Shown piece after piece: positions 17,691 through 61,311 of a stretch of 64,000 nucleotides of DNA. The notes under the pieces were generated by a model. It worked only from the letters and a program-made list of their open reading frames with translations. It made no database searches and was not told the origin of the DNA. Location of the stretch: positions 1 through 64,000 of the IMG/VR virus record IMGVR_UViG_3300017991_000048; one strand, given 5' to 3'. Each line of letters begins with the position of its first letter. Position 1 is the first letter of the stretch. A program made the translations under genes and the position numbers.

Positions 17691-19187
17691 ATGAGTAAGA
17701 ACTATCTACCCACCTTCGACGTTTCCAAGAAAGGTCTGGCGAACATACTGGCCAGGAGGGGCGTCGAGTTCATCGTTCTGGAACTGATTCAGAACGCCTT
17801 GGACGAAAACTCATCCAGGGTCGAAGTTGAGTTCATCCCCGTTCCTAATAAAAGAGGACTGTACCGATTGACCGTCGAAGACGACAACCCAGAAGGCTTC
17901 AAAAACATAGCCAACGTCTATACACTGTTTGGAGAATCCCCCAAGGCTTCCGATCCAACCAAGGCTGGACGTTATATGATGGGTGAGAAACTCGTTATTG
18001 CAAACTGCCAAGAGGCATCGGTTCTGACCACCACCGGGCATGTGCTGTTCAATGAAAAGGGCAGGCGTCATGGTCGGAAACGCCGAGACTTCGGATCAAT
18101 CTTCACCGGGACTTTGCGAATGACAAAGGCTCAGGCCGAATGTATCAGGGCTGCGGTAAGTACCGTTATCGTCCGTGAAGATGCCAAGCTGATATTCAAT
18201 GGCATCCAAATGCCATACTGGGAACCTGAGACAACGTTCCAGGGTACATTGACAACCGAAAAGGCTGACGAAGAGGGACGCATTCGCCGCACCAGACGCA
18301 AGACCAACATAGAGGTCTACAATGTTCAGGACGGTGACACCCCCATGCTTTACGAAATAGGACTACCGGTTGTCGAGATTGACTGCCCTTACCATATTAA
18401 TGTCTGCCAGCGAGTGCCTCTCAATGTTGAGAGAGACAATGTTACCCCGGCTTACATGCGTGAGATTCTAACACTTGTCCTGAACGAAATACACCAGGAG
18501 CTTGACGAAGAGGATGCCAAAGCACCCTGGATTGATGAAGCCCTGGAGTCTGGCAACGTAACCAACGAAGCTCTTGGAGATGTGATTACGGCTCGTTATG
18601 GTGACAAGGTTGTCTTGCAAGACCCCAAGGACCGGGAAGCTGAAAAGATTGCCGTATCCAAAGGCTACACAGTTATGCCCAACTCAATGCCGTCTGCCAC
18701 GCGGAAAGCGATAAAAACGTCTGGCCACGTGCTCCCGGCAGGACAAGTGACACCTAGCCCCAAGGCGTGGTCTGACGACCCAAATGCAAGCCCTGCTGAC
18801 TATATTCCTTACGAAAAGTGGTCGCCGGGTATGAAGCGGGTTGCCGTTTATGCGACACGGCTTGCTCGACTGCTGATGGATGTGACCCTGAATGTTTCTT
18901 ATGTCAGGGTGCCCAACAATTTCCAAGCCTGTTATGGAAGAGGCACCCACACAGGTGACCTCACATTCAACCTCCGCTATCAGAAAAAGGCGTGGTTTGA
19001 TGAGGCTTACGATAATATCGAGGAACTGGACAGCCTGCTCATTCACGAGTTCGGGCATCATTACAGCAGCGACCACCTGAGCGGCAGGTATCACAACGCC
19101 CTGTGTGACCTTGGAGCCAAGCTCAAAAAGCTGGCACTGGCCGGTAAGCTCAGGGAGCCGACCAAGAAACTTCAAGTACGGTCGTAG
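17691..19187 (+). CDS. GHKL ATPase fused to C-terminal HExxH metallopeptidase-like segment
   Basis: ELIQNALDE, VEDDNPEGF, AGRYMMGEK; LLIHEFGHH near C-terminus. Confidence 0.78.
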   Translation: MSKNYLPTFDVSKKGLANILARRGVEFIVLELIQNALDENSSRVEVEFIPVPNKRGLYRLTVEDDNPEGFKNIANVYTLFGESPKASDPTKAGRYMMGEKLVIANCQEASVLTTTGHVLFNEKGRRHGRKRRDFGSIFTGTLRMTKAQAECIRAAVSTVIVREDAKLIFNGIQMPYWEPETTFQGTLTTEKADEEGRIRRTRRKTNIEVYNVQDGDTPMLYEIGLPVVEIDCPYHINVCQRVPLNVERDNVTPAYMREILTLVLNEIHQELDEEDAKAPWIDEALESGNVTNEALGDVITARYGDKVVLQDPKDREAEKIAVSKGYTVMPNSMPSATRKAIKTSGHVLPAGQVTPSPKAWSDDPNASPADYIPYEKWSPGMKRVAVYATRLARLLMDVTLNVSYVRVPNNFQACYGRGTHTGDLTFNLRYQKKAWFDEAYDNIEELDSLLIHEFGHHYSSDHLSGRYHNALCDLGAKLKKLALAGKLREPTKKLQVRS

Positions 19188-24219: not shown

Positions 24220-24543
24220 ATGAAAAAGATAGCCGAAAGCCCAAATCCGAGTCGGCAAGAGTTGGCTAGCTCTCTTAAAAAGTTAGCCAGACGGATAACG
24301 GCAAGAGGTTCCGACCTCGGTGATCTGATCTATGACCTCAAAGACGCTGTTGAGAGTGCTGGTATATATGCTACCCAAGACGCCTTGAAGGAACTCAAAA
24401 AAGAAAGACTCAAGGGTGAGCAAAAGGACTTAATCGATGACCTTATGAAACAAGGTTGGGATGCAGTTAACGAGATGTGGAATACGTTCCACTTGTGTGA
24501 GGAAACAGAAGACGAGTTGGCGGACCTAGAGCTAGAAAGCTGA
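24220..24543 (+). CDS. Protein with NPSR..LA leader module
   Basis: MKKIAESPNPSRQELASSLKKLARRITA; RBS GAGGGAG. Confidence 0.75.
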   Translation: MKKIAESPNPSRQELASSLKKLARRITARGSDLGDLIYDLKDAVESAGIYATQDALKELKKERLKGEQKDLIDDLMKQGWDAVNEMWNTFHLCEETEDELADLELES

Positions 24544-24544
24544 T

Positions 24545-25186
24545 ATGGCAGATTCAGACAGACCCTCCGAAACCAAAGCTCAAATAAAAGCCCGACATCA
24601 GGCAGAGCTTGAAGCAATGGGTTATGTTCCCTGGATAAAGAAATGGGGCGGGGTTGCCGGTGCCATTACAGCCATCATAGCATTATGTATCACGATTGGT
24701 ACGCAAGTCTGGCCTTGGATGGTTCAATATGGAGTCAAAAAAGAACTGACTACGGCACGTAAGACCGCAGAGTCCGTGGAGGATCTGAAAAAACTTGTGG
24801 AACAGACTCAAGCATTACTTCAGGCAACCATCAAAGCTACAGATGAGCAAGTTCAGGAAAGCGATTTGAGAGCACAACGAATGCATGATTCTATTGAGGC
24901 TCTGAGAAATGAGGTTCGACTGCGGCACGGAATAGAGTCTGGCATCGTTCTGACAGCCATACAGCCGGTTCATACCTCTGGAATCACTGTAGGATCAGCC
25001 GGTGGCGGTAGTGCTGGATCATCTTCCCGGCCAAGGCCAAGAAGAGCGCGGCCCATGACACGACAACAAAAGCTCAAGGCTGTAACGGAACAGGCAGACG
25101 CTACACTCAAAGCGGCGGAGATAGACCCGACAGCAGATTTCGATGACGACGTAAAAGCCAAACTTAAGATTCAGAAGAAAAAGTAA
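24545..25186 (+). CDS. Single-pass membrane protein with coiled coil
   Basis: Hydrophobic GGVAGAITAIIALCITIG then heptad-like region; lysis role possible but unsupported. Confidence 0.65.
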   Translation: MADSDRPSETKAQIKARHQAELEAMGYVPWIKKWGGVAGAITAIIALCITIGTQVWPWMVQYGVKKELTTARKTAESVEDLKKLVEQTQALLQATIKATDEQVQESDLRAQRMHDSIEALRNEVRLRHGIESGIVLTAIQPVHTSGITVGSAGGGSAGSSSRPRPRRARPMTRQQKLKAVTEQADATLKAAEIDPTADFDDDVKAKLKIQKKK

Positions 25187-25224
25187 GGACGGGGAAAAGC
25201 GGAGACGCGGCCCAAGGTGATATT

Positions 25225-25665
25225 ATGGAAAAGATAGCCAACCCCCAAGAACTAGCCTCTGAACTGCGGTCCCTGATTCAAAAAGTTCAAGAACCGAATC
25301 CAAGCCGAGAGGAACTGTCTTCTGACTTAAAGAAGCTAGCCGCCATCCTCACCAAATTTTCCGGGTGGGAAGCCCATGCAACTCTTGTGGATTGTGTGGA
25401 AGCTATAACGCACAACAAGTTTCGCATTCGAGTTGGAAATGGAAGCCTAACAGTTGATTTGAACGGAGTCATCCATGCACTTGCTGACACGTTAGGGCTC
25501 AGCTTCCCCAACGTAGAACCTGTTCTCGATAACGCGCTTTTGAGAAGAGGGCAAATGGTGTCAAAGGAATTAATGAACGTCCAAAGAGACTTGAACAGAG
25601 TACTAGACGACGTGTTTGAAATTGCTGCGGACCTGGAAAAGTACCTGGATCGAGAGAGTGGTTAG
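25225..25665 (+). CDS. Protein with MEKIANPQELA leader module
   Basis: N-terminus near-identical to 33653 and 27293. Confidence 0.75.
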   Translation: MEKIANPQELASELRSLIQKVQEPNPSREELSSDLKKLAAILTKFSGWEAHATLVDCVEAITHNKFRIRVGNGSLTVDLNGVIHALADTLGLSFPNVEPVLDNALLRRGQMVSKELMNVQRDLNRVLDDVFEIAADLEKYLDRESG

Positions 25666-25692
25666 ACGGCTGATCTGGTGTAATTATACTCT

Positions 25693-25938
25693 GTGGCCCG
25701 TTACAGTCTTACAGCAGTGTTTAACGTCATGCGTTATTTCTGTGAGCACGAAGAAGCTTACAGCACCGACTTGATGAAAGCCTGTGATCTGTCGTATAAC
25801 CACGTCTACCATCTTCTCAAAGATTTGGAACAGGACGGGGAGTTGGTTTCCGAAATGCGAAACGGCCCTCACATGCAACGCAAATACTTCAGGCTATCTG
25901 ACAAAGCCAGAGCGGAATGGGAAACAAGCACTCACTGA
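25693..25938 (+). CDS. Winged-helix DNA-binding protein
   Basis: DLMKACDLSYNHVYHLLKDLEQDGELVS...RKYFRLS. Confidence 0.7.
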   Translation: MARYSLTAVFNVMRYFCEHEEAYSTDLMKACDLSYNHVYHLLKDLEQDGELVSEMRNGPHMQRKYFRLSDKARAEWETSTH

Positions 25939-25958
25939 ATGTTTCACGTGAAACAATT

Positions 25959-26132
25959 ATGACCGACACAGAACTGGAAAAACTACACACGCAACTAGAT
26001 GAAGAGCTTCCGTGGTGGCAGCTTTTCGTTTTCGCTTACCGGTACAAAAACCTAAGAGCCTTGGCCCGGTATCTTATTAGAGAGCTTCAGGACGAAAAGA
26101 AAGGGGTCTGGAAAGGGAAAGACGTGGAATAA
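25959..26132 (+). CDS. Small hypothetical protein
   Basis: Start MTDTELE within ORF 25917..26132. Confidence 0.5.
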   Translation: MTDTELEKLHTQLDEELPWWQLFVFAYRYKNLRALARYLIRELQDEKKGVWKGKDVE

Positions 26133-26133
26133 A

Positions 26134-26415
26134 TCAAGTACGTTTCTCCATTTTATTATATTCCGCCCACCCCTTATCTGTCGGTGCCCACTTGAAGTTA
26201 TTTTCTTTCACGTAACCCTTTTCCTCAAGGATATGGATAGCTCTTATTGTTGTGATTTGTTTCCTCTTCACTGAGGGAAGTATTTCATGCAGCCGTATTG
26301 ACTCATGGGTGTGGCCAAACGTGCGCTTACGTTCGATTTCATTACACACAGACCACAAAATATACTTCTGGTTACTGGTTATGGAAGCAACTCTGCAATC
26401 GTAAGAATATTGCAT
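26134..26415 (-). CDS. Winged-helix-like small protein
   Basis: RAIHILEEKGYV....W.PT.KG. Confidence 0.55.
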   Translation of the reverse strand: MQYSYDCRVASITSNQKYILWSVCNEIERKRTFGHTHESIRLHEILPSVKRKQITTIRAIHILEEKGYVKENNFKWAPTDKGWAEYNKMEKRT

Positions 26416-26699
26416 CAGGGAAGTTTGTACTCAATATAACGATAAGCTTCGTGTAGCCTGCCTAACGCATCATCTAGGCTCTCTCTACTCTCGGTCAATT
26501 GCTCATCTATATCCGCTTGGAACTCTTGCAACTCTATAAGGTCGTCCTCTCTAAGCATATTTTCAGGGTAGCCGAGCAAGGTGCCCCGTTGCGCGAGTTG
26601 GCGGCGTACTTGACCTAAGACCTCTTTGGCCTGTTTTAGCTCCCGTTCCCATTGCTTGATGGAAACAGTCGTTGCTGTGCGTTTGTAAGAGTACTCCAT
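26415..26699 (-). CDS. Coiled-coil hypothetical protein
   Basis: M(E/Q)YSY N-terminus shared with 26134..26415. Confidence 0.65.
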   Translation of the reverse strand: MEYSYKRTATTVSIKQWERELKQAKEVLGQVRRQLAQRGTLLGYPENMLREDDLIELQEFQADIDEQLTESRESLDDALGRLHEAYRYIEYKLP

Positions 26700-26708
26700 T
26701 GATAACCC

Positions 26709-27293
26709 TTAAAGTTTCTCGAAGCCTATGCGATCGACAAAGTGATATTGAGAGCCAATCTGAACCACGTCACCGACAGACATGCTTGTGTGATCCAATC
26801 CCTTACGAGTAACCAATTGCCTTGCCTGTCCCATAGGACTCCAAGCCTCACCTTGCATCATACGAAAAATCTCTTCAAGGTTCCGTTCTCCCACAGTTCC
26901 TAATATGTTGTGGGTCTTTTCTGGGATCTCTGCCAGCAAATCAGGACGTCGCTCTTTAAGCCAGTCATATCCCATTATAATGTCGCGACGGTCCTCTATG
27001 GGGATCGCCTTTTTCACGTACCAAATGGTAGCGGCTTTCCCGTCATACTCAGGGTTCCCCGTTATCCTCGCGGCATCGGCCAAAGAACGGTACTGCTTCC
27101 GGTACTCCCTCTGAACGTCCCGCTCTTTTAGGCTTTGCTCAAGCCAGGGCTCAAGTGCTTTTGCCCCTAACCGAGACGCTAGAGAACGTAACTCGGTAGC
27201 TATCCTAACTCGGCTTGGGTTAGATCCTTGAGCGTATTCAAGGAGAGTTTCCAGTTCTTGGGCCAACTGTGCGGGAGTAGCTAACTTTTCCAT
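26709..27293 (-). CDS. Leader-module protein with C-terminal YodL-like motif
   Basis: MEKLATPAQLAQEL leader; HTSMSVGDVV resembles YodL HSLSVSDVV. Confidence 0.7.
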   Translation of the reverse strand: MEKLATPAQLAQELETLLEYAQGSNPSRVRIATELRSLASRLGAKALEPWLEQSLKERDVQREYRKQYRSLADAARITGNPEYDGKAATIWYVKKAIPIEDRRDIIMGYDWLKERRPDLLAEIPEKTHNILGTVGERNLEEIFRMMQGEAWSPMGQARQLVTRKGLDHTSMSVGDVVQIGSQYHFVDRIGFEKL

Positions 27294-27344
27294 GCTTTTG
27301 AGGGATTATAAAAAGATCCAATTAAACAGGTGTAAGTACGCGAT

Positions 27345-27539
27345 ATGTGCAAGAATAATAGCACTCGACCTTTATGGATAAATAGCGAAATTGTCTATAT
27401 TGACGAGTGCATACACAAGCTGATCTGGTGTCTGAATCGGAATGGGATGGAAACGGTAGCCTCGTGCTGTGGGCACGGCAAGCAACCCGGCAGAATCCTA
27501 CTCAAGGATGGCCGGGAGATAATAATATCTGATCCTTGA
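27345..27539 (+). CDS. Small phage protein (ET.ASCCGHG type)
   Basis: IDECI..LI..LN..G.ET..SCCGHG pattern. Confidence 0.7.
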   Translation: MCKNNSTRPLWINSEIVYIDECIHKLIWCLNRNGMETVASCCGHGKQPGRILLKDGREIIISDP

Positions 27540-27609
27540 TCTTCTTTACCCAAGTCGGTGGCCTCAAATTCAGAGTCCATCGCTTTAGAGTTATGATAAA
27601 GTGTAAAAC

Positions 27610-27951
27610 ATGACGACACTATCCAATCTCCAGGATGAATTCACGGTATTTGTTACCCGTGACTTCGGGATGAACACCCACGCGGTCCCGCTCTGTGGCC
27701 TTTGTGGAAATACCGGGATTGTGAAAGCCATCTGGAAACCACCGTGGGCACCCACGGTAGATGCAAAAACCTATGAAATAGAGAGCTATTGCATCTGCTC
27801 AAACGGTCGGACTTTGCGTAAGAAAAACCCTCGCATAGGTCGGAAGTGGGGTGGATCATCGGTTACGAAGACACCTGACGGCTGTACCCTGGACGCGCCA
27901 GTGCCAGAAAAGGAGGGCCGAAGCCTCTGGGACCACGTGAAAGACGAATAA
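27610..27951 (+). CDS. Zn-finger protein with LWDHV tag
   Basis: CGLCGNTG...CICSNG; ends SLWDHVKDE. Confidence 0.8.
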   Translation: MTTLSNLQDEFTVFVTRDFGMNTHAVPLCGLCGNTGIVKAIWKPPWAPTVDAKTYEIESYCICSNGRTLRKKNPRIGRKWGGSSVTKTPDGCTLDAPVPEKEGRSLWDHVKDE

Positions 27952-28058
27952 AGTTCCTAAATGACTGAAGCCGCCCCTGGCACCAAAGACGGCCTCAGAA
28001 CTCCTTCTACCCAAGGCAGATGAGCTACCGTGAGGTTAACCACGGCAAGCGCTATGTG

Positions 28059-28274
28059 TCAACGACCCACCCACCCATCGGCTTCTGACTCCTTTAAAAG
28101 CTTCTCAGTCTTACGTCTCCAGGCGGAAAACCGTTCAGCAGCCATATGCTCAGGGTAGTTATTCCACCGTTTGTCTCCACACCACTCGCACAAAGTGTAA
28201 GAACGGTCGAAAGTAGCTGAAATCTCATTGATTAATTCGATTATGGCGATAAGCCTGTCTCGGTTTGTTATCAC
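28059..28274 (-). CDS. Small Zn-ribbon protein
   Basis: CEWCG; RBS GGAGG upstream. Confidence 0.6.
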   Translation of the reverse strand: MITNRDRLIAIIELINEISATFDRSYTLCEWCGDKRWNNYPEHMAAERFSAWRRKTEKLLKESEADGWVGR

Positions 28275-28354
28275 GGCGAACCTCCTACATATTTAGGGGG
28301 TCTGGGAGCCGAGATGGTTTCAATTCAGCCAAAACGGTGTAATATTTCTCAACA

Positions 28355-28606
28355 ATGGAAGTTTTCAGACGCTTGTCAAACCCACCTTCTAAGTGGCATG
28401 TAGCCAACCCGGACGACGGGACAATAGCACTCTGTGGGTGGCACACAAACCCTGACGGAAATTCTGATTATATAAAACAGGCGATCGAAGTTTTCGAAAG
28501 CCACGCAATACCCGACGACAACCCCAGTGAGATATACTGCCATAACTGTCTACGAAAACGAAGAAAGGCTCTGAAAGACCTCTGGGATCACTTGTCCGAA
28601 AGTTGA
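28355..28606 (+). CDS. Zn-finger protein with LWDHL tag
   Basis: WH......LCG...CHNC; ends DLWDHLSES. Confidence 0.8.
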   Translation: MEVFRRLSNPPSKWHVANPDDGTIALCGWHTNPDGNSDYIKQAIEVFESHAIPDDNPSEIYCHNCLRKRRKALKDLWDHLSES

Positions 28607-28627
28607 TTAAATCAACTTGGTGTAATT

Positions 28628-28849
28628 GTGTCAGAACCTCCAAAATGCAAATGCGGAAAAACTCTTGATCTGTGGCCTGCTCGACACCATACCTTTCGAA
28701 CCTTCACCTCAACCCGAAAAAGCTTTTTACCCCCGACCTACGTTTGCACCAGATGCCATCTATCTTATCCAATAGATCACTTCGATACCAAAAACCTCTG
28801 GGAACATTTATCTGAGGACTCAAATGGCAAAAAAACTCAAAACAAGTGA
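28628..28849 (+). CDS. Zn-ribbon protein with LWEHL tag
   Basis: CKCG...CTRC; NLWEHLSED. Confidence 0.7.
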   Translation: MSEPPKCKCGKTLDLWPARHHTFRTFTSTRKSFLPPTYVCTRCHLSYPIDHFDTKNLWEHLSEDSNGKKTQNK

Positions 28850-29321
28850 CTTTTTCAACACCGCTGTCTCCAGAGACCTCGCTCAGGCTGTTGAAGTTAT
28901 TAAAGCTCAAGAGCAGACTGTTCAGGCTGTTAAAGCTCAAGCTGTTAAGGTTCAAGCCTACACACCCGCCACAGACTTCCAGACGGTTTACGCTACTGAA
29001 AACCCCTTCCATACAACGGAAGAGGGCGAAGTTAGGCGTCTAAGCCCTAAGAAACAAGGAGCCCAAAAAACGCTCGAAAAGTATAGACACAGTGTGCTGA
29101 AAGGTTACCCACGCGGAGAGACGGTAGAGAAATACTATAGAGCGGCTGTTATCTTAGACGAAGAACTGGACCACGACATTGAACTCGATCATATAAGATT
29201 GCTCTTGCGTGTTATTGACAAACTGCGAAACGAGCTTGATGTTGATACCCCCGGTGAACCGCCGCCTAAGAAGAGAAAGGCAAACGACCTTTGGGGCCAT
29301 CTTACCAACGATGAAGAATGA
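28824..29321 (+). CDS. Hypothetical protein with LWGHL tag
   Basis: Ends NDLWGHLTNDEE. Confidence 0.75.
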   Translation: MAKKLKTSDFFNTAVSRDLAQAVEVIKAQEQTVQAVKAQAVKVQAYTPATDFQTVYATENPFHTTEEGEVRRLSPKKQGAQKTLEKYRHSVLKGYPRGETVEKYYRAAVILDEELDHDIELDHIRLLLRVIDKLRNELDVDTPGEPPPKKRKANDLWGHLTNDEE

Positions 29322-29836
29322 ACCGTTACGAACTTGAAGAACTCTTAGAAGATGAAGACCGCATAGGCTTGGCAGTTTCACCCTGTAATGATGAGCCGCG
29401 TCTGTGGACTCATCACACTGGCCTTGTCGTTGGTGATCCTTACAATCAAACCGTTCTTGCCTTCTTTTGTATTTACGGCCAAAGAGCGGTTCAGATGCAC
29501 AACTGGCTGCAATCGTTAGACGTGTTCTCCTCCGATTTAATCCCCGAATCGGTAAACTTTCAAGGTCGTGTGTATGGCGATAGAGAGTCAATAGAAGTTG
29601 CTTGCTACCGATGTTATAAAGTTACTCGGATAACACCCACCCGGCTGATCACCAGGAACATACCATGTGGCTGTGCCGCTGGCACTTTTGGCCCTATTCA
29701 CTTGGTCAGATTTATAGACCTACCCAGGCCAGGGATTGAAGATTATGTCCCTTACTTGCAGCAGCGAGAAGGCAGGACACCAGAAACGACACCGGAACCT
29801 GAACTCGACTATTATGAATGTGTGAAAGACGATTAG
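29318..29836 (+). CDS. Hypothetical protein
   Basis: 172 aa, CYRC...CGC; tail LDYYECVKDD may be a degenerate tag. Confidence 0.7.
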   Translation: MNRYELEELLEDEDRIGLAVSPCNDEPRLWTHHTGLVVGDPYNQTVLAFFCIYGQRAVQMHNWLQSLDVFSSDLIPESVNFQGRVYGDRESIEVACYRCYKVTRITPTRLITRNIPCGCAAGTFGPIHLVRFIDLPRPGIEDYVPYLQQREGRTPETTPEPELDYYECVKDD

Positions 29837-29839
29837 GCT

Positions 29840-30307
29840 TTACCACTTGGTTCGGTTTTCATCCCGACCGGTAGAGCCTTCGGGGTAATGTATTGTGCCC
29901 TTCCATCCGGGCCAGAAGGGTTTCCAGGAATCGAGCCCTCTCCAAAGATACGTCTTTTCGCCCCAATCTCCGTAAGAAGCGCTACTCTCCATGTCGTAGG
30001 CTTTTGATCCCTTAATATAGCCCGAAGGGGTTTTAAGACCCATATACTCAAAAATGTCATCTGAGGCTAAATCGGCAAGAAGAGCATCTCTTGAAATAGG
30101 ACCGGGGTAGTTCTGTTCCAGTTTCTCTGGCTTGTTATAAAACGTACCATAAATAATACGAGCGGGTTTGGCGGTCGCCTGAAGTCCTTTGACTATCTTC
30201 CTGGGATCTCTGGCTCCATCCAGGGCTCTTTCCTCTTTCAAGAGTTTCTCAAATGTTTTTCGTAGCCGTCCAATGGTCTTGTCCCGGTTAGTTACGTAAC
30301 GCTCCAT
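29840..30307 (-). CDS. Hypothetical protein
   Basis: 155-aa ORF, converges on 29836. Confidence 0.65.
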   Translation of the reverse strand: MERYVTNRDKTIGRLRKTFEKLLKEERALDGARDPRKIVKGLQATAKPARIIYGTFYNKPEKLEQNYPGPISRDALLADLASDDIFEYMGLKTPSGYIKGSKAYDMESSASYGDWGEKTYLWRGLDSWKPFWPGWKGTIHYPEGSTGRDENRTKW

Positions 30308-30712
30308 CCGTTGCTGCCGAACGGCCTCTGCTCTTTGCTTCTTTTTGACTTCCTCTTCTTCGATGGTCTGGACCTGGGCTGGCTCCCAGTTGCGAACCTT
30401 TTTCTCATAACGAGCCAGGAATCTTTCGGACTCTTTAAGTCTCCATTTAAGATCACGCTCAGCATCCTTGTAAACTCTGTCCCACTCGGCATCGCCCCGC
30501 TAGCCGTAGCCCGGACGCTTATAGCCATGGTGGGCCAATCTGCCGCGAGGACACTTGACTTTCTGCTCACAGAACCCGCAAGTCCCAATGTGCCGGGTCT
30601 TTGTAGCCATGCCCTCAAGATACCGGGCAACTATATTATGGGCGGGAGTCATCTACAAAGCCGGTCTTACCAAAAGAGTATGATTTCCAGCCAAATCGGT
30701 GTAATATTAAGA

Positions 30713-30859
30713 ATGCGAGCATTCCTCCAAAACCTATACAAGAGGTACCAGCGATGGAAATGCCGCAGGGACTTCTCAAAGCTCCGTAAGAATGAACAAA
30801 AACTGTTTACATGGTTGGGGTACGACCCGGAAACTCTGATCCGAAGGGGAAAGCTGTAA
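30713..30859 (+). CDS. Small basic protein
   Basis: ATG just after CGGTGTAATA box; 3' part of ORF 30311..30859. Confidence 0.5.
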   Translation: MRAFLQNLYKRYQRWKCRRDFSKLRKNEQKLFTWLGYDPETLIRRGKL

Positions 30860-30864
30860 ACGAT

Positions 30865-31149
30865 ATGGACAGGATACCTGAAACCATAATGTTTGGGGGT
30901 AAAGAACGGAAGGTCGAGCCGGGTTGGAGCAACTGGTATAAAATCCGCATTGGAAAGCTAGGAACGCTGGATATCCATGATTGCGGCAAATCCGGGTTTC
31001 AAGCCTTTTGCAATACAATTATCCCAAGGTGCAACGCCCAAGGATTCACGTTCCACGAGGCCGTCAGCAGCCTGGAAATAGCGATGAATGACTACCTTGA
31101 GGCTCTAGGTGTGGAACTCGGCTACGTGAGTTTTGATAAAAGCCGTTGA
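30865..31149 (+). CDS. P.T.MFGG.ERKV family protein (HicB-like C-half)
   Basis: Paralogous to 52169..52711 and 54776..55042; FTFHEAVSSLE. Confidence 0.7.
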   Translation: MDRIPETIMFGGKERKVEPGWSNWYKIRIGKLGTLDIHDCGKSGFQAFCNTIIPRCNAQGFTFHEAVSSLEIAMNDYLEALGVELGYVSFDKSR

Positions 31150-31320
31150 TCCGGAACTTTATTATATCAAATGCTGACGGGAACAATTTTGCTTGTTAGC
31201 GAAATCATTTACTTTTTTGTCCAGAAATTTTTATTTTCGTGTAAATTGTTGAGATCGGTCCTGTTTTCGGTGTAGTAGATACTGTCAACCTTTTGGCGTA
31301 GGGCCAGAAAGAAAATGTAA

Positions 31321-32013
31321 ATGTTAACTAAGGCTAGAAAATATCAAGCAACCCTGAGAGGCGTGACTCCAATACTTATGAACAATGACAATCTCGCCTG
31401 GAAGGAAAGGGTAAAAGCGTGGCAGATCGACCCGGCCAACAAATCCAAGAGCGTAAAAGGTGACGACCGTTCCCCCGCCTGGACTTGGATTGGCTGTTTG
31501 TACAAGGCCAATGACTTGATCGTCGTTGAGTCTGACGCGATCATGGCAATGCTCCGAGACGCTGGACAGAAATGTCCAACCGGAAAAGGTAGGGCATCTT
31601 ACAAGGCCATAACCCAAAGCGGCATCCTTGTGGACCAAATCGGCTGGCCGGTGGAGACCTCCAAGGGGTTCATAAAGTGGTCATCTTTTGACGCCCTCCA
31701 TGATGACGAGGACTTTACAGTTCACGAAAAGGTGGCGAACCAGCACGGGATTGACCTTTTTGTCAAAAGGGTAACAATTGGCAACAGTAAGTGGGTCAGA
31801 GTCAGACCACGATTCGATCAGTGGAAGATTGAGGGAACCATTACTGTAGTGGACGATACCCTTACAACGGACGTCCTTCAGACTATCTTTAATGTCGGAG
31901 GGCACCGCTGCGGTCTGTGTGACTGGAGACCGGGAAGTCCCAAGAAGCCCGGTAGTTTCGGCATGTTTGAAACCACACTCAAAGAGATTAAAATGGAAGG
32001 AGTTGCGGCATGA
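31321..32013 (+). CDS. Stand-alone RAMP-superfamily (Cas7/Cas5-like fold) protein
   Basis: N-terminal LRGVTPILMN strand, IVVESDAIMAMLRDAG helix, RVRPRFDQW, C-terminal Gly-rich loop GGHRCGLCDWRPG....GSFGMFE; no other cas genes. Confidence 0.7.
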   Translation: MLTKARKYQATLRGVTPILMNNDNLAWKERVKAWQIDPANKSKSVKGDDRSPAWTWIGCLYKANDLIVVESDAIMAMLRDAGQKCPTGKGRASYKAITQSGILVDQIGWPVETSKGFIKWSSFDALHDDEDFTVHEKVANQHGIDLFVKRVTIGNSKWVRVRPRFDQWKIEGTITVVDDTLTTDVLQTIFNVGGHRCGLCDWRPGSPKKPGSFGMFETTLKEIKMEGVAA

Positions 32014-32462
32014 GTGGCAAGACAAACGTATTTTTCGGCGGGGTGCCAACGGCTCCCGACGTAAAGAAACTCATGGATCATTTCGGAGTGCCTGAGGAAA
32101 ACGTGTTACTGAACTGGACCGAAATCGAAGAGGTGATAGGAGAGGAGAAAGGCTCCAGCCGTTTCACTTCCGTTACCGGGGCATGGAGGAAAAAGCTTCG
32201 TAAGGACCATAATATCGAAATGATCCCCGAAATCGGCAAGGGTCTGAAAGCCGCTAATCCGCATGAGCGTGTTGATCTGGCAGGAGGTCTTATCCACAAA
32301 GCCACCAATAGCATCAAACGCTCCATCTCTGTAGCCGACAAGACAGACGTAACCCGATTGGACGAAGAGCATAAGAAACGACACACTTTTCTTAGTGTGT
32401 TAGGCGGAAAGATGCGTATGCTTTTCATCAACGAGCAGAAGAAGCTGCCTACCGGCGAATAG
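32010..32462 (+). CDS. RAMP-associated accessory protein, possibly winged-helix
   Basis: ATGA overlap with RAMP gene; 150 aa, basic; directly precedes pentamer array. Confidence 0.75.
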   Translation: MSGKTNVFFGGVPTAPDVKKLMDHFGVPEENVLLNWTEIEEVIGEEKGSSRFTSVTGAWRKKLRKDHNIEMIPEIGKGLKAANPHERVDLAGGLIHKATNSIKRSISVADKTDVTRLDEEHKKRHTFLSVLGGKMRMLFINEQKKLPTGE

Positions 32463-32471
32463 CCGGTAAAC

Positions 32472-32900
32472 TGAGGATTCTGTTGCGGCAGGGTGTGCTT
32501 CGATTCGGCAGGGTTAGCCAGGGCTTGGTCAGGTCCGCTACGGTATGGTTGGGTGAGGATTATGGTTCGGCAAGGTTCGCCAGGGTACGGTAGGCTGCGG
32601 TCTACTACGGTTCGGTTGGTACGCTTTGGTTCGGTCGGGTCTGGTGAGGATTATGGCCCGGTGAGTTGGGCAGCGAGGTTAGGGACGTGGTTTGTTGAGA
32701 CTCGGTTGGCTTTGGCCCTGTTTGGTACGCTGCGGCAAGGTGAGGACCCTGGTTTGGTGAAGGTATGGCACGTTTCGTTTCGCTATGGTTGGGCCGGGTG
32801 AGGTATGGTACGGTCGGGTTGCCTTTGGTTTGGTGTGGCGAGGATTGCGTTTTGGCGAGCTATGGTATGGCAAGGTTTGGCGAGGATTAGGGTATGGCTA
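32472..32900 (+). ncRNA. G-G-Y-N-N pentamer array, candidate guide-RNA locus (five units)
   Basis: About 75 tandem pentamers with mostly GGT/GGC (else GNY) at positions 1-3 and variable positions 4-5; 7-nt GGA(T/C)nnn spacers after (G)YGA at 32475, 32557, 32648, 32744, 32842, 32884. Confidence 0.75.
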
Positions 32901-33091
32901 TGACCAACGCAGAGATTTATTGCTTTACCTGGAAATATATCGGAGGTGTCTACCACGCAAAAAATGAGGACGGTAATCCTCTGTGTGGTGCTTACCCAAC
33001 CAATCTCAGATCCTCCGATGTCAAACCCAGAGGCTACCGGCCCTGTAAACGGTGTTTCCGGGACTTGTGGGATCACTTGATTAAGGAATAA
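32900..33091 (+). CDS. Zn-finger protein with LWDHL tag
   Basis: YH......LCG...CKRC, paralog of 28355; ends DLWDHLIKE. Confidence 0.8.
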   Translation: MTNAEIYCFTWKYIGGVYHAKNEDGNPLCGAYPTNLRSSDVKPRGYRPCKRCFRDLWDHLIKE

Positions 33092-33290
33092 AACGATGGA
33101 TGGCGATGGTAATATTCCCGACAGCATTATCGAGTCTACGGTCCGCAAGTGGCTGAAGGGCAACTACCGTGATGTTTACCCAACCCCCACAATGATATAC
33201 AACGCTCTCTTGCGTATTAAAACTGGCTCTCAAAGAAACCGCCAGTCTGAAGTGGGAAGAGATAAAAGACGAAGCCCTGGTAAAGTAACT

Positions 33291-33653
33291 CTACTCAGAC
33301 TGTGCAGCGACCCCGCCCCAATAGTAAGCGAACTCCCAAAGAGCGCTGGATATATTACGGGTATGAGCGAGAGGCATACGAGAGGTAGCGCTCATGGCTC
33401 TTTTGAGTGAGACTAATAACTCCGTGTGCATATCTTTAAGCGCACGAGCGGCTTCAGGATCGGCAGCTTTGAACCCGGCCTCATAAGATTCCATCATGGC
33501 TCTTATGATGGGCATGTCGGCTGTGGCGACCTTGTTAGCCAACTCTCTCAAGTCAGAAGCGAGCTTTTCGCGGCTTGGCTCCGGGCCTTGGGCATACTCA
33601 AGAAGGGTCTGTAGTTCTTGGGCTAATTCTTGGGGATTGGCTATCTTTTCCAT
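33291..33653 (-). CDS. Protein with MEKIANPQELA leader module
   Basis: Leader then VATA; RBS AGGGAG. Confidence 0.75.
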   Translation of the reverse strand: MEKIANPQELAQELQTLLEYAQGPEPSREKLASDLRELANKVATADMPIIRAMMESYEAGFKAADPEAARALKDMHTELLVSLKRAMSATSRMPLAHTRNISSALWEFAYYWGGVAAQSE

Positions 33654-52910: not shown

Positions 52911-53165
52911 ATGAACTGCCTGACCTGTAATGAGCCAATTGGCCATACAATTTACTTCCGAAGGCGGGGCAATCATTCTGACCAGAAGGCCCTGCTTTAC
53001 TTCTGTTCCGGGCATTGCAGGTTCCGTGCCATTACAGAAGGCGGCTTCACCTCGTGTGATGGTTGCCTACGAACCCCTTCTTGTGACCCTCACTGTTCAT
53101 CGGGCCGGGGAACCAACTTCACAATCAAACCCATGACTCTTTGGGATTATCTGAGGCATTCTTAA
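52911..53165 (+). CDS. Zn finger with LWDYL tag
   Basis: CLTC...YFCSGHC; ends TLWDYLRHS. Confidence 0.75.
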   Translation: MNCLTCNEPIGHTIYFRRRGNHSDQKALLYFCSGHCRFRAITEGGFTSCDGCLRTPSCDPHCSSGRGTNFTIKPMTLWDYLRHS

Positions 53166-53218
53166 AACACACCGTCTTGCGATTCGGTGTAATACTTGAT
53201 AATATCCACAAGGTCATT

Positions 53219-53815
53219 ATGCCCGAACTGATCGTCACAGACTCCGATTTGAGCGACCGGACCAAGGTTGCCCCTTGTACTCTTTACGTGTGCAAAAGTG
53301 ACCGTCCTGCTACCAACGACGGGCTTTACTGGCGCGTAGTGTACACAATTTCGGCATGTGTGGACGATGTTTTGGGGCATTTCCACACGAAAGAGGATGC
53401 GATCAAGTTCGCTGAAGAGCTTTCGGACCCCAGAGAGTTCCTTGGACTCAAAGTTCAGAACGACCATTTTCGGCAAGAGATAGCCGAACGACAGGGGCAA
53501 TTAGAAGCTCTCAAAAACATAGCCGACGCTATGGTCCAGGAACTTAAGAAAAGACGCGCTCCACACCCGGACGATTCTGAAGGGTTTACAACAGCGTCCG
53601 AATTGAGTTTTGAGTTAACGCAGTTGCGTCTCGGAGCCTTTGACCCCGACTTTCCCAGGCTTCTAACTTTTCTTCTGAGGCATTACCAGGGCGCGGAAAG
53701 CCCTCTGGAGTTAAAGTTGCAAGTCGATTCCGTCTGGGACTGGTATCAAATCAAGCAAATCGAGGGCGATCCTAACTCACCTACATTGTGGGACCACCTA
53801 GAAAACAAGGAATAA
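53219..53815 (+). CDS. Helical-domain paralog (module A) with LWDHL tag
   Basis: GLYWRVV module + ELKKRR...KLQVDSVW + TLWDHL. Confidence 0.8.
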   Translation: MPELIVTDSDLSDRTKVAPCTLYVCKSDRPATNDGLYWRVVYTISACVDDVLGHFHTKEDAIKFAEELSDPREFLGLKVQNDHFRQEIAERQGQLEALKNIADAMVQELKKRRAPHPDDSEGFTTASELSFELTQLRLGAFDPDFPRLLTFLLRHYQGAESPLELKLQVDSVWDWYQIKQIEGDPNSPTLWDHLENKE

Positions 53816-53816
53816 C

Positions 53817-54065
53817 ATGCCTGACATGCCTGACAGCGAATCCCTCAGAGCCTTGCAAGCCCTGTTATCAGAATATGACAAAGCGAATGATGAGACTCTG
53901 GAAGCTCTCAAAGCCGGGGATATGGCTAAGTATGAAAAACTCGCTCAAGCGAAAATGAAAGCCATAGGCGAGCTTGGCCCTGAAGCCTTAAGAAATGTTA
54001 TGAGGGAGCATCCCGAATTCAGACCCCAAGGTTATGACCCGGACTCGGAGGATCAAAATGCCTGA
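53817..54065 (+). CDS. Small helical protein
   Basis: In operon. Confidence 0.65.
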   Translation: MPDMPDSESLRALQALLSEYDKANDETLEALKAGDMAKYEKLAQAKMKAIGELGPEALRNVMREHPEFRPQGYDPDSEDQNA

Positions 54066-54444
54066 GTACGGACCTTCTGAAACCATTGCGGAGTTAAGAT
54101 TCCGGTGTGGTCAGTATCAGGACAGGCTTGATGACCTCCAAATGAGGCTCAATAACATTGAACGTGTCGGCAAAGATTTGGTCCATGAACTCAAAAGTAG
54201 ACGGCCCCGACACCCAGAAGACTCTGAGGAGTATGAGTTAACAGCCGAACTTATGTTTGAAACGGGCCAGCTTCGTGACGGTGTTTGGGATCTCGACCTT
54301 GAAAAGGTTTTGGAGTACCTCGGAGAACGTTACAGATATACAGAGAACCCTTGGTTGATCAAAAGTCAGGTTGACACTGTTTGGGTAAGGTTCCAAGCCG
54401 AACAAACCAAACATTCCAACCTTTGGGATCATTTGAAGGGGTAG
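54058..54444 (+). CDS. Helical-domain paralog with LWDHL tag
   Basis: Closely similar to C-half of 53219. Confidence 0.8.
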   Translation: MPEYGPSETIAELRFRCGQYQDRLDDLQMRLNNIERVGKDLVHELKSRRPRHPEDSEEYELTAELMFETGQLRDGVWDLDLEKVLEYLGERYRYTENPWLIKSQVDTVWVRFQAEQTKHSNLWDHLKG

Positions 54445-54445
54445 T

Positions 54446-54760
54446 ATGGACTGGGTATCTCAATACTGGGTTGGCTTTTGTGTGGCGGGTTATATCTGCC
54501 TTTTGGTCCTTTATTTTCGCACCCTTTACCACTACTACAAGATGAGAGATCTTTACTCCCATGTCCAGGTTGAGAACTCAAAACTACTCAATCGTAACCT
54601 TGAACTACTTGAGCGCAACCATCAGCTTGACCGTCAAAATACCTATCTGGAGCGTCAAAATAGCTCGATGCTCAGAGCCCAACCAACCAAGACAAAAGCT
54701 CGAAAACCGAAACCACCACCGGACGACCCTAAAAGCCTTTGGGATCATGTGAAGGACTAG
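54446..54760 (+). CDS. Membrane-anchored coiled-coil protein with LWDHV tag
   Basis: N-terminal TM YWVGFCVAGYICLLVLYF, heptads, Pro linker, SLWDHVKD. Confidence 0.8.
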   Translation: MDWVSQYWVGFCVAGYICLLVLYFRTLYHYYKMRDLYSHVQVENSKLLNRNLELLERNHQLDRQNTYLERQNSSMLRAQPTKTKARKPKPPPDDPKSLWDHVKD

Positions 54761-54775
54761 AAAAGAGTTGATGTT

Positions 54776-55042
54776 ATGAAATTAGATGCACCTAAAACCG
54801 TAAAGTTCGCCGGTATCGAGAGAAAAGTCAAAGTACACAGGGGCTTTGCCCGTCTCAGACCTGGGATTGACGTGATAGTGCTCACAAGCGGCAGGTACTA
54901 CGCCATGGAGAGGCACCAGACCGACTCTGCCTTTACGGGCACAGGCGATACCTTCCAGGAAGCTGTATCCAACCTGGAAGCCAATGCACTATCCAAGTTC
55001 AAGGCTTTGGGCAAGATGCTAAATTATGATGTGGAGAAATGA
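54776..55042 (+). CDS. P.T.KF.G.ERKV family protein
   Basis: GDTFQEAVSNLE...LG..LNYDVE. Confidence 0.75.
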   Translation: MKLDAPKTVKFAGIERKVKVHRGFARLRPGIDVIVLTSGRYYAMERHQTDSAFTGTGDTFQEAVSNLEANALSKFKALGKMLNYDVEK

Positions 55043-55326
55043 CCAAAATCATACTCACAAGCGAAAGCACACCTGTCATTGACCGGGAAGGCGAGACCCC
55101 TCCTGGCACTTTGATTGTGTGCAAGACCAATAACCCGGATTCTATCAAGCGGGGGTTATATTGGCGTGTGGTACAGGTGCATTCCCAGATGGGTGTTGAC
55201 CTTCAGGGACGCTTTGCCACCAAAACGTCTGCCATAGCTTATACGGATAAAATGACAAACGGATCACCTATGACTGTTGTCCCTGAAACCACCAAAACCC
55301 TTTGGGACCATCTGCGATGCCAATAA
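55039..55326 (+). CDS. Module A alone with LWDHL tag
   Basis: TPPGTLIVCKTNNP...RGLYWRVV; ends TLWDHLRCQ. Confidence 0.8.
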   Translation: MTKIILTSESTPVIDREGETPPGTLIVCKTNNPDSIKRGLYWRVVQVHSQMGVDLQGRFATKTSAIAYTDKMTNGSPMTVVPETTKTLWDHLRCQ

Positions 55327-55928
55327 GAAGAATTGACACACCGGAACAGCTACTAGAAGAAATCAGTCGCTTTTTCCGATCAAACGCCTCGGTAAGCAGG
55401 GTTGACGCTGCTTACACCTTGCGGCAACTGGCCAAGCGTATCAACCCGCCTGACGTCAACTCTTCTGAACCCCTTGACCCCAAACCTGAAGCAGTCCCAA
55501 TTGACGGCCTCAATAGAATCCACGGTATGGTCAAAGACCAAACAAAATCCATTAGAGAGCTACGCAACGCTCTTTTCCGAAGAAACAAAGAGGATCTAAA
55601 GACAAGCGACACGGGAAAGGCTTTGATCCGTGAAATGCGTGATCGTAGGGCCAGATATCCAAATGAGCCAACTCTTTACGAAACACCCCTCAGAGAGCTA
55701 CTTCAATACGAACTTGACTGTCTTCTGAAGGGCGCTTGGCATACGAAAAAAGACACCCTGGCTTATATCAAGCTAAACTATAACGTTACCGCCGACTTCA
55801 AAGAGGCGGTTGACTTCAAAAAGAACATCGATGCTCTCTGGGATCAGTTTGAAACCGAATGGATTGAAGACCATGGCGGCAAATCCACCCTTTGGGACCA
55901 TTTAGAAAAGGACGCCACAAATGACTGA
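55317..55928 (+). CDS. Leader-module plus helical-domain paralog with LWDHL tag
   Basis: RIDTPEQLLEEI...SR..AAYTLRQLAKRI resembles MEKIANPQELA leader; KKNIDALW; STLWDHL. Confidence 0.8.
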   Translation: MPIRRIDTPEQLLEEISRFFRSNASVSRVDAAYTLRQLAKRINPPDVNSSEPLDPKPEAVPIDGLNRIHGMVKDQTKSIRELRNALFRRNKEDLKTSDTGKALIREMRDRRARYPNEPTLYETPLRELLQYELDCLLKGAWHTKKDTLAYIKLNYNVTADFKEAVDFKKNIDALWDQFETEWIEDHGGKSTLWDHLEKDATND

Positions 55929-56330
55929 ACTGGCAGACATCGGTGGTATCTTTGCCCTTCTAGCTCTCTGGCATTTCATTGCTGACTGGCTGTTCCAATC
56001 TCACTATACGGCGGTCAATAAGTCTGCCAGACCCTTGATCCGGGCGTGGCACTCATTCGCCTATGCGGTGTACTTCTTTCCCCTCGTGTTCTTTGTTCCC
56101 ATTCTAACCGGAACCCTGCTACTCTTGTGGCTTTTCAGTTCCCATTACTTCATCGATTCTTACTACCCTCTCTACTGGTGGGCCAAGTACCAACGGAAGA
56201 TGCCAGAACCTAACAATCCCAGACAACTTGAGGCTTGGGTAGCCTCACCGTCAACCCTGTTCTGTTTATTACGGTTGACCAAATTTTTCACCTCATCTGC
56301 CTCTTACCTTTGGCGTGGCTCGTAAGATGA
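55921..56330 (+). CDS. DUF3307-like membrane protein, 1-nt deletion near 56258
   Basis: HFIADWLFQS, HSFAY, SHYFIDSY; DQIFH motif appears in the shifted frame. Confidence 0.75.
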
Positions 56331-56572
56331 ACACCTATATCTTCCCCTCAGACACCCGTGTACTGGTCGTTATGGCTGAAACGATAGAAGTGGCCGTTTC
56401 CATATTACAGCCGACGCAGTTGGAAATAAATAAGGTCGTGGTCCTATCTGACAGTAATACCACTGTGGAGATTTCATGGACCGATAAAAAGGCTCATATG
56501 GTCAAAAGGACCGGACCGCAGGAGCAGATCCGGGTTTTATGGGATCACCTGAAAAGTGATAATGAGGATTAG
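56327..56572 (+). CDS. Small protein with LWDHL tag
   Basis: Ends VLWDHLKSDNED. Confidence 0.75.
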   Translation: MNTYIFPSDTRVLVVMAETIEVAVSILQPTQLEINKVVVLSDSNTTVEISWTDKKAHMVKRTGPQEQIRVLWDHLKSDNED

Positions 56573-56573
56573 T

Positions 56574-56804
56574 ATGGACCCCACAGAATGTCTTTTGGAA
56601 TTACTCAAGGCTTGCAAAGAGAAACGAACTATAGATGCCAGAGATCAAGCCAAGGCCCTGTATGAGCACCTACTGAGAAGCGGAGCCGTGCCTGACTCCG
56701 ACCGTGCTGTCATTGACTATGCAGACACCTATCTTCCAGAGAAGACCCCCTCAGAGGAACGTGAAGCGTTTATGGCGGCTCTCAACTTCATGGACGAAAA
56801 GTGA
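56574..56804 (+). CDS. Small hypothetical protein
   Basis: MDPTECLLEL... in operon. Confidence 0.65.
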   Translation: MDPTECLLELLKACKEKRTIDARDQAKALYEHLLRSGAVPDSDRAVIDYADTYLPEKTPSEEREAFMAALNFMDEK

Positions 56805-59439: not shown

Positions 59440-59444
59440 GTGCT

Positions 59445-61305: not shown

Positions 61306-61311
61306 ATCGAA

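What the first reader, a model, noticed from the sequence alone, without database searches (positions are those of the whole stretch)
24220..33653. Shared N-terminal leader MEKIANPQELA...NPSR..LA..L..LA on dispersed solitary genes
Seen: 24220, 25225, 27293(-) and 33653(-), and more distantly 55317, start with a ~30-45-aa helical module ending near (I/V)(T/A)A or LGA, followed by unrelated bodies (YodL-like, helical). Established: some large phages target internal head proteins via N-terminal propeptides removed by the prohead protease (T4 IP capsid-targeting sequence, phiKZ head proteins). Inference: a capsid-targeting/cleavable leader, i.e. a second address system complementary to the C-terminal tag. 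55317 carries both.
Basis: partly seen in the sequence, partly recalled or inferred. Interest (0 to 1): 0.6.

Follow-up and report, generated by a model that had tools for sequence, protein, structure and literature searches.

The report
Portable N-terminal tag on jumbo-phage proteins
A 398-kb uncultivated phage and its relatives put the same 43-residue two-helix module in front of many unrelated small proteins. It looks like a shared address or docking tag, perhaps for loading cargo into the virion, but where it sends the proteins is not yet shown.

Summary
Four window genes (24220+, 25225+, 27293-, 33653-) and three more in the same 398-kb phage genome begin with a 43-residue module, M-x-KIA-x-P..L..EL..LL.Y....PSR..LA..L..LA.RVA. 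Their bodies share no detectable similarity.

The conservation is at protein level: synonymous sites are saturated and the upstream DNA is unrelated. A profile of the module finds 660 protein clusters among 1.84 billion. About 95% of the 150 best carry it at residues 1-45, in front of more than 120 unrelated bodies. All examined hits are metagenomic. IMG/VR hits lie mostly in sister jumbo phages of 241-417 kb, with 0-14 copies each. No Pfam, PHROG or NCBIfam model covers it.

AlphaFold2 gives a confident helix-turn-helix followed by a soft linker. Close homologues of one body (DUF7007) lack the module, so it is portable. Rare proteins carry a second copy at the C-terminus. A conserved 539-aa protein in the structural gene block has a related internal hairpin (hhalign P 2e-5).

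The address-tag reading is supported. Capsid targeting is plausible but untested. Cleavage has no support: no protease motif sits at the boundary. 55317 is a borderline member. The C-terminal LWDHL tag is absent from sister phages that carry the module.

The parts
25225..25665 (+). Leader-bearing gene, 146 aa. The leader is residues 1-43 (25225-25353). The body is alpha/beta plus a long helix and matches no known family.
33291..33653 (-). Leader-bearing gene, 120 aa. The leader is residues 1-44 (33522-33653). It is the copy closest to the family consensus in this window.
   Evidence: (P0002, best hit, E 5.7e-22)
26709..27293 (-). Leader-bearing gene, 194 aa. The leader is residues 1-44 (27162-27293). 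The last 32 residues give a sub-threshold YodL match.
24220..24543 (+). Short-form member, 107 aa. It has M-K-K-I-A, then the PSR turn and helix 2 (residues 1-28, 24220-24303); helix 1 is missing.
   Evidence: E 1.3e-8 against the genome's ORFs
55317..55928 (+). Possible distant member. Its N-terminal 40 residues align with the whole module but score only borderline. The body belongs to a separate paralogue family of at least 13 members and ends in the LWDHL tag.
17691..19187 (+). Weak lead only: a 498-aa GHKL-type ATPase with a C-terminal HExxH motif. It is present in all six large leader-bearing genomes checked and absent from the leader-free sister G008. It belongs to a widespread viral family.

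Best explanation
The module is a portable two-helix docking or address domain. By itself it is half of a helical bundle. Both helices carry widened hydrophobic seams (a/d/e positions, with small Ala), plus invariant polar residues K3, E13, Y20 and R28. It should therefore complete a bundle with one common, conserved partner and so bring many unrelated, fast-evolving accessory proteins to the same place.

The destination I consider most likely is the assembling virion. The tagged proteins would be packaged and delivered with the DNA, as with T4 internal proteins. A candidate route is piggy-backing on the binding site used by a related internal hairpin of a conserved 539-aa protein encoded in the structural gene block (294865-296484).

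Shown: the module exists, is under protein-level selection, is portable, folds as a hairpin with a soft linker, and is confined to one clade of jumbo phages.

Inferred: that it binds a common partner, that the partner is in the virion, and what happens to it afterwards. I see no evidence that it is cut off.
For: - Seven copies in this genome, with unrelated bodies.
- 660 clusters in 1.84 billion proteins. About 95% of the 150 best hits have the module at residues 1-45. PSR is invariant in 150 of 150, and conservation collapses right after RVA[GA].
- Saturated synonymous sites and unrelated upstream DNA.
- AlphaFold2 gives helices 7-21 and 28-45 at pLDDT 91-96, then a dip to 54-65.
- Homologues of the DUF7007 body at 42-56% identity lack the module or carry other short N-termini.
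- Bodies are not conserved among sister phages whose portals are 62-68% identical.
- Copy number is 0-14 per sister genome, mostly in islands of small accessory genes.
- Two-module proteins exist, with one copy at the N-terminus and one at the C-terminus.
- A related internal hairpin is conserved in the 539-aa protein of G000, G001 and G008 (hhalign probability 77%, P 2e-5, 36 columns).
- One sister (G004) has a diverged leader gene packed between the 242-aa head-operon gene and the prohead protease, and G000 has one in the structural strand block.
- One body is DUF7007. Its neighbours carry domains typical of delivered conflict proteins: DUF932, zeta-toxin-like and LPD1-TopoIB (PMC5512222).
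- The phage has a portal, terminase, prohead protease, a Q-rich scaffold-like protein and a small HK97-type capsid protein.
Against: - No proteomic or expression data exist for any member, and no RNA run holds the phage.
- Leader genes are not enriched near head genes: 2 of about 26 against about 1.6 expected.
- Most lie among small genes that look early or accessory. They carry neither of the two promoter-like motifs I found, but that absence is not significant.
- The closest complete relative, G008 (capsid protein 95% identical), has no leader gene at all. The system is therefore dispensable.
- The match to the 539-aa protein is modest, and that protein's function is unknown.
- No partner was identified.
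Confidence: 0.4

Rival explanations
1. The module is a T4-like capsid-targeting propeptide that is removed by the prohead protease after loading.
For: - N-terminal position in about 95% of the 150 best hits, and a sharp end of conservation at RVA[GA] followed by a flexible stretch.
- A prohead protease is encoded.
- T4 and SPN3US precedents exist (PMC9026906, PMC10052503).
Against: - No conserved Glu-type (L/I-x-E or A/S/G-x-E) or other recognisable cleavage motif at the boundary. Glu after PSR is present in only 85 of 150.
- It is 43 folded residues instead of 10-19.
- Copies at C-termini and one related internal copy exist.
- The type of protease could not be determined.
Confidence: 0.15
2. 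The module docks the bodies onto a partner that is not in the virion, such as a host complex or a phage-made intracellular hub. Many different effectors would then act at one site in the infected cell.
For: - The same structural and evolutionary facts as the best explanation.
- Most copies sit in accessory islands beside genes of early or conflict type.
- There is no enrichment near head genes.
Against: - The module is absent from 185,579 bacterial species genomes and from cultured phages. This gives no host hint either way.
- No tubulin or multisubunit RNA polymerase is encoded, so a phiKZ-type phage nucleus is unlikely as the destination.
- The only related sequence found outside the family lies in a protein of the structural block.
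Confidence: 0.25
3. The module is only a self-association (dimerisation or oligomerisation) domain that many small proteins have borrowed, with no common destination.
For: - The heptad pattern resembles designed antiparallel and 'type 2' coiled coils, which are the only PDB sequence matches.
- Two-module proteins exist.
Against: - Up to 14 different proteins in one cell would form mixed oligomers.
- The invariant polar residues and the PSR turn suggest a specific partner.
- The homodimer prediction gave no verdict.
Confidence: 0.12
4. The module is a stability or timing tag (degron or chaperonin-recruiting N-terminus), or simply the only recognisable remnant of one old family whose bodies have diverged beyond recognition.
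For: - A phage GroEL is encoded.
- T4 N-termini can recruit GroEL (cited in PMC10052503).
- Small phage proteins diverge fast.
Against: - GroEL is also present in the leader-free sister G008.
- One body is a known independent domain (DUF7007) whose close homologues lack the module.
- Body lengths range from 0 to about 240 residues with different predicted secondary structure.
Confidence: 0.08

Closest known systems
T4 capsid targeting sequence (CTS) of internal proteins IPI, IPII, IPIII and Alt
   Same: A shared N-terminal tag on otherwise unrelated, poorly conserved small proteins of one phage group. The repertoire differs between close relatives, and the tag lets a phage add varied cargo (PMC9026906).
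   Different: The T4 CTS is about 10 residues, acts as a peptide and is cut at L/I-x-E by gp21. This module is a 43-residue helix-turn-helix with no such motif, and it can sit at a C-terminus. Packaging is unproven.
N-terminal propeptides of giant-phage head proteins (SPN3US, phiKZ, 201phi2-1)
   Same: Large phages that package many proteins; the N-terminal regions are thought to direct assembly (PMC10052503).
   Different: Those propeptides are 20-254 residues, are not one shared sequence, and end in A-x-E. This phage has no phiKZ-type hallmarks: no tubulin and no multisubunit RNA polymerase.
MuF-fused polymorphic toxins and phage polyvalent proteins
   Same: A conserved virion-associated N-terminal part with variable C-terminal effector parts, proposed to be injected (PMC5512222). 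One body here is DUF7007. A TopoIB protein carrying LPD1, a domain family named after polyvalent proteins, and a zeta-toxin-like protein lie nearby.
   Different: No MuF or portal domain. The proteins here are small and single-bodied, and the tag is a minimal hairpin.
Docking hairpins such as the RIIa/Dpy-30 dimerisation-docking domain, or the helix-turn-helix coat-binding end of the P22 scaffolding protein (both recalled from memory)
   Same: An amphipathic helix-turn-helix of about 40 residues at a protein end that works by completing a helical bundle with a partner.
   Different: No sequence membership: no Pfam hit even at E up to 1. Self-association is unresolved. Fold searches return only generic hairpins.
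Encapsulin cargo-loading peptides
   Same: A short terminal tag that loads varied cargo into an HK97-fold shell.
   Different: Those are short extended peptides, usually C-terminal. Nothing here shows binding to the capsid protein.

Membership tests
T4-type capsid targeting sequence | Short (about 10-19 residue) N-terminal peptide | tested here: not met
   The module is 43 residues and is predicted as two helices at pLDDT 91-96.
T4-type capsid targeting sequence | Ends in a prohead-protease site (L/I-x-E, or A/S/G-x-E in giant phages) | tested here: not met
   The boundary is L-A-x-R-V-A-[GA]. No conserved Glu sits there, and Glu after PSR is present in only 85 of 150.
T4-type capsid targeting sequence | One tag shared by unrelated cargo proteins that are variable between relatives | tested here: met
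   142 bodies fall into 121 BLAST groups, and bodies are not shared by sister phages.
T4-type capsid targeting sequence | Tagged proteins are present in proheads or virions and are processed | not testable with these tools
   No cultured member, no proteome, no RNA run.
RIIa/Dpy-30-like docking-dimerisation domain | Match to the family profile | tested here: not met
   No Pfam family covers the module in the window proteins even at E up to 1. Scans of the sister copies and of 150 members at E 0.001-0.01 also found none.
RIIa/Dpy-30-like docking-dimerisation domain | Forms a homodimeric four-helix bundle | tested here: inconclusive
   The two-copy prediction gave no verdict.
Pfam YodL (PF14191), body of 26709-27293 | Score above the gathering threshold | tested here: not met
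   19.9 bits against a cut-off of 24; only residues 163-194 match.
Pfam DUF7007 (PF22653), body of 136470-137183 (outside the window) | Score above the gathering threshold | tested here: met
   65.9 bits, E 6e-18, residues 58-161.
The leader family itself, for 55317 | Significant match to the leader profile at the N-terminus | tested here: inconclusive
   E 0.017 against the genome's ORFs. The alignment covers model positions 2-42, but PSR is replaced by VSR with a 2-residue gap.

The most novel reading that the evidence does not exclude
A clade of marine and sediment jumbo phages uses a universal, dockerin-like 43-residue hairpin to load up to 14 different, rapidly exchanged effector proteins into the virion. 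It does so by mimicking an internal hairpin of a core structural-block protein. The tag would then be a natural, transferable cargo-loading domain, usable to package arbitrary proteins.
Probability: 0.3. Interest if true: 0.8.

Novelty: new variant of a known kind. Interest (0 to 1): 0.62.

Why it matters
The module is an undescribed domain family. No Pfam, PHROG or NCBIfam model covers it, and all members examined are metagenomic. It marks hundreds of otherwise unannotatable proteins of huge phages as one functional class.

If it is a packaging or docking tag, three things follow:
- It identifies the injected or co-localised accessory arsenal of these phages from sequence alone.
- It points to a conserved receptor.
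- It offers a compact handle for loading foreign proteins.

Even without the mechanism, a profile of the module is an immediately usable annotation tool.

Tried and rejected
- Known-family scans. Pfam, PHROGs and NCBIfam scans of the members and of 150 homologues found no family for the module.
- Word search with the leader of 25225: only the protein itself.
- Other collections. tblastn against GenBank phages and a pattern scan of bacterial genomes found nothing. Megablast of 24 kb against phages and plasmids found nothing.
- Fold searches. Foldseek against the PDB and the ESM Atlas returned only generic helical hairpins. A PDB profile search returned only designed coiled coils.
- Complex prediction of two leader copies: no verdict, so not used as evidence either way.
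- AlphaFold2 of the two-module protein P0119: pTM 0.50, C-terminal copy at low confidence, and no contacts returned. It says nothing about module-module pairing.
- Promoter timing. A strong motif (TCGGTGTAATA, mostly 10-17 nt before starts) and a candidate late motif (AAATGTA[AG]A) are both absent upstream of the leader genes, but the absence is not significant (P 0.13).
- DNA-repeat or shared 5' regulatory element: rejected.
- Phage-nucleus import signal: unlikely, because no tubulin or multisubunit RNA polymerase is encoded.
- Reads. There are no RNA runs. Other sediment and seawater runs hold short, mostly identical (99% or more alike) fragments only, and one apparent chimera is just the 33-nt stretch shared by 25225 and 33653.
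- Phyletic profiling for a receptor. Seven non-leader genes are present in G001 and G004 but absent from G008. The best of them, a GHKL ATPase with an HExxH motif, belongs to a widespread viral family.
- PDB sequence searches of the protease and of the 366-, 539-, 280- and 498-aa proteins: nothing.
Full report
**What is there**

The window is the first 64 kb of a complete 398,071-bp virus record with direct terminal repeats and 48% G+C. Four ORFs in the window open with one module: 24220-24543(+), 25225-25665(+), 26709-27293(-) and 33291-33653(-).

An HMM made from just these four copies was run against all 2754 ORFs of the genome. It finds three further copies, at E 2e-16 to 2e-19:
- 136022-136408(-)
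- 136470-137183(+), divergently placed 61 bp from the previous gene
- 300664-301176(-)

The aligned consensus is M-x-K-I-A-x-P-x-x-L-x-x-E-L-x-x-L-L-x-Y-(5)-P-S-R-x-x-L-A-x-x-L-x-x-L-A-x-R-V-A. 24220 is a short form. It keeps M-K-K-I-A and then jumps to the PSR turn and the second helix.

**It is a protein feature, not a DNA repeat**

The 120 nt upstream of the seven start codons do not align, and similarity begins at the ATG. Across the six full-length copies the proportion of synonymous differences averages 0.76, which is saturated. The non-synonymous proportion is 0.35. These are therefore old copies held by selection on the peptide.

The bodies behind the module give no BLAST hit to each other or to any other ORF of the genome at E<0.1.

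**How far it reaches**

The 46-position profile was scored against 1.84 billion representative proteins. It finds 660 clusters at E up to 1e-3, and 303 at E up to 1e-10.

In about 95% of the 150 best hits the match is at residues 1-45, in proteins of 45-280 residues. In those 150:
- PSR is invariant.
- A5 and L38 are invariant.
- M1, K3, I4, P7, L10, E13, L14, Y20, A32, L35 and A39 are nearly invariant.
- Conservation collapses immediately after R-V-A-[GA] into a P/G/S/T/K/D-rich stretch.

The 142 bodies of at least 30 residues fall into 121 BLAST groups. Almost none has a Pfam or PHROG family, and none has a membrane-like segment.

Every member looked up is metagenomic and, with one misleading automatic label aside, unnamed. 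The module has no Pfam, PHROG or NCBIfam model. It is absent from 50,697 GenBank phage records, and a pattern scan of 185,579 bacterial and archaeal species genomes found no copy.

**Whose it is**

The genome is a tailed phage. It encodes:
- a terminase (318267-320309), a portal (314227-316032) and a prohead protease (308711-310219);
- a Q-rich acidic scaffold-like protein (307467-308666);
- a small HK97-type capsid protein (305834-306712);
- a baseplate J protein and a 2267-aa collagen-like protein.

It has no tubulin and no multisubunit RNA polymerase.

In IMG/VR the module lies mostly in contigs of 241-417 kb whose portals are 62-85% identical to this one, so they form one clade. Copy number per record is as follows:

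| Record | Copies | Note |
|---|---|---|
| G001 | 14 matches in 13 genes | |
| G004 | 4 | |
| G007 | 2 | |
| G002 | 1 | |
| G003 | 1 | |
| G006 | 1 | |
| G009 | 1 | |
| G008 | 0 | complete, 412 kb |

G008 is the closest relative examined: its capsid protein is 95% identical and its protease 69%.

The copies sit mostly in islands of small genes on both strands. The phage itself turns up as mostly identical (99% or more alike) fragments in other sediment and seawater metagenomes. No RNA run holds it.

**Anatomy**

AlphaFold2 was run on the 146-aa protein with 150 homologues as the alignment. It predicts helix 7-21, a turn at 22-27 (the PSR turn) and helix 28-45, at pLDDT 91-96. Confidence then dips to 54-65 before the body.

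Both helices carry hydrophobic residues at a, d and e positions, with small Ala in the second helix. This reading comes from the sequence itself, and the only PDB sequence matches are designed antiparallel and 'type 2' coiled coils. A lone hairpin of this kind cannot bury those seams. It should complete a bundle with a partner or with itself (inference).

**Portability**

The body of 136470-137183 is a DUF7007 domain. Its closest homologues, at 42-56% identity over the body, lack the module. They carry other short N-termini instead, and one of these resembles helix 2 alone.

The protein 300664-301176 matches sister phages only through its first 44-61 residues.

The few hits in which the module appears internal mostly keep a Met or Val at the start of the module. 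They look like upstream ORFs run together with it.

Two cases are different. P0119 and a G001 protein carry one copy at the N-terminus and a second copy, without a Met, at the C-terminus. The module therefore works as a domain and not only as a free N-terminal signal.

**A relative inside a core protein**

The best non-member hit in this genome is an internal segment of the 539-aa protein 294865-296484. In G008 the best non-member hit is the orthologous protein.

That protein is conserved in the clade and lies in the structural strand block. In G004 it is 6 kb from the capsid gene.

The segment K-T-A-T-G...L-R-G-L-A...P-S-R-x-x-L-A-S-x-L-R is conserved in G000, G008 and G001. It is preceded by a second, similar hairpin. 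A profile-profile comparison with the leader gives 77% probability and P 2e-5 over 36 columns.

This is moderate evidence that the tag and this internal hairpin are related. The function of the 539-aa protein is unknown.

**Does it target the capsid?**

For:
- The logic matches the T4 internal proteins, whose short shared N-terminal sequence directs varied, poorly conserved proteins into the prohead core (PMC9026906).
- The only outside relative of the tag lies in a protein of the structural block.
- In G004 a diverged leader gene sits between the 242-aa head-operon gene and the prohead protease, abutting the protease start.
- G000 has one copy within the late strand block.
- One body is DUF7007, and the neighbouring genes (DUF932, zeta-toxin-like, LPD1-TopoIB) carry domains of the kind attributed to delivered conflict proteins (PMC5512222).

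Against:
- Only 2 of about 26 leader genes in five genomes lie in or near a head module, against about 1.6 expected by length.
- Most lie among accessory genes.
- No expression or proteome data exist.
- The system is dispensable, as G008 shows.

For cleavage I find nothing. The boundary has no conserved Glu-type site such as T4's L/I-x-E or the A-x-E of SPN3US (PMC10052503). The protease could not be typed.

**The other claims**

55317 aligns over the whole module at its N-terminus, but only at E 0.017 to 0.5, so it is possible but not established. Its body belongs to a separate family of at least 13 paralogues at 53-72 kb.

The C-terminal LWDHL tag is real and striking in this genome, with about 50 ORFs between 22 and 104 kb carrying it. 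None of the 150 leader proteins from elsewhere carries it. It is found on 0, 0 and 1 ORFs in G001, G004 and G008. The two tags are therefore not a conserved pair.

The 'YodL-like' label is below threshold.

**Verdict**

The 'shared address tag' reading is well supported. 'Capsid' is the most likely destination but unproven, at about 0.4. 'Cleavable' is unsupported.

The family is new to the curated libraries. As a mechanism it is a new variant of a known kind.

Noticed in passing
window 22335-63667 and on to about 104 kb of the genome: About 50 small ORFs end in a C-terminal motif [T/D/N]-L-W-D-H-L followed by polar or acidic residues. It is lineage-specific: 48 ORFs here against 0, 0 and 1 in sister phages G001, G004 and G008. 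Its function is unknown.
   Followed up: partly
window 1819, 14113, 17667, 28335, 30697, 48188, 48577, 51686, 62152 and many sites beyond: A motif T-C-G-G-T-G-T-A-A-T-A is enriched up to 30-fold in upstream regions, most often 10-17 nt before the start codon. That spacing suggests a promoter for very short or leaderless transcripts. It is common at 0-140 kb and 340-398 kb and rare in the structural block.
   Followed up: partly
genome 239807, 256324, 277146, 307408 (outside the window); window 31313: A second motif, A-A-A-T-G-T-A-[AG]-A, often with A-G-A-T upstream, lies 37-95 nt before several structural genes or operons, including the one with the capsid gene. It is a candidate late promoter.
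   Followed up: no
genome 294865-296484 (C-end) and 152488-153303 (N-end), outside the window: A 38-residue motif (F-E-E-G-K-P-A-D-P-T-K-N-M-S-P-E-D-A-K-K-W...K-D-K-F) is 89% identical between the C-terminus of the 539-aa protein and residues 9-46 of a 271-aa protein. It occurs in tandem in sister phages. It may be a second portable module.
   Followed up: partly
window 17691-19187: A 498-aa protein with a GHKL ATPase motif (E-L-I-Q-N-A-L-D-E) and a C-terminal H-E-F-G-H motif. It is present in all six large leader-bearing genomes checked and absent from the leader-free G008, but it belongs to a widespread viral HATPase_c_3 family.
   Followed up: partly
window 53141-62099 and genome up to 72548: A family of at least 13 paralogues (150-225 aa) shares a C-terminal domain with W-[DE]-x-x motifs and the LWDHL end. 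55317 is one of them.
   Followed up: no
genome 130043-145222 (outside the window): An island beside the two leader genes at 136 kb holds DUF932, a radical SAM enzyme, methyltransferases, RNase HII, a Dam methylase, a zeta-toxin-like 571-aa protein and a 955-aa LPD1 plus type IB topoisomerase protein.
   Followed up: partly
window 25225-25257 and 33621-33653: The first 33 nt of these two leader genes are nearly identical. They differ at 2 positions, the longest DNA-level identity among the copies. In one metagenome run a contig of one paralogue therefore aligned to the other.
   Followed up: yes
genome 286112-292915 (outside the window): A 2267-aa protein consists largely of collagen triple-helix repeats (Pfam Collagen, E 9e-144), probably a fibre.
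   Followed up: no
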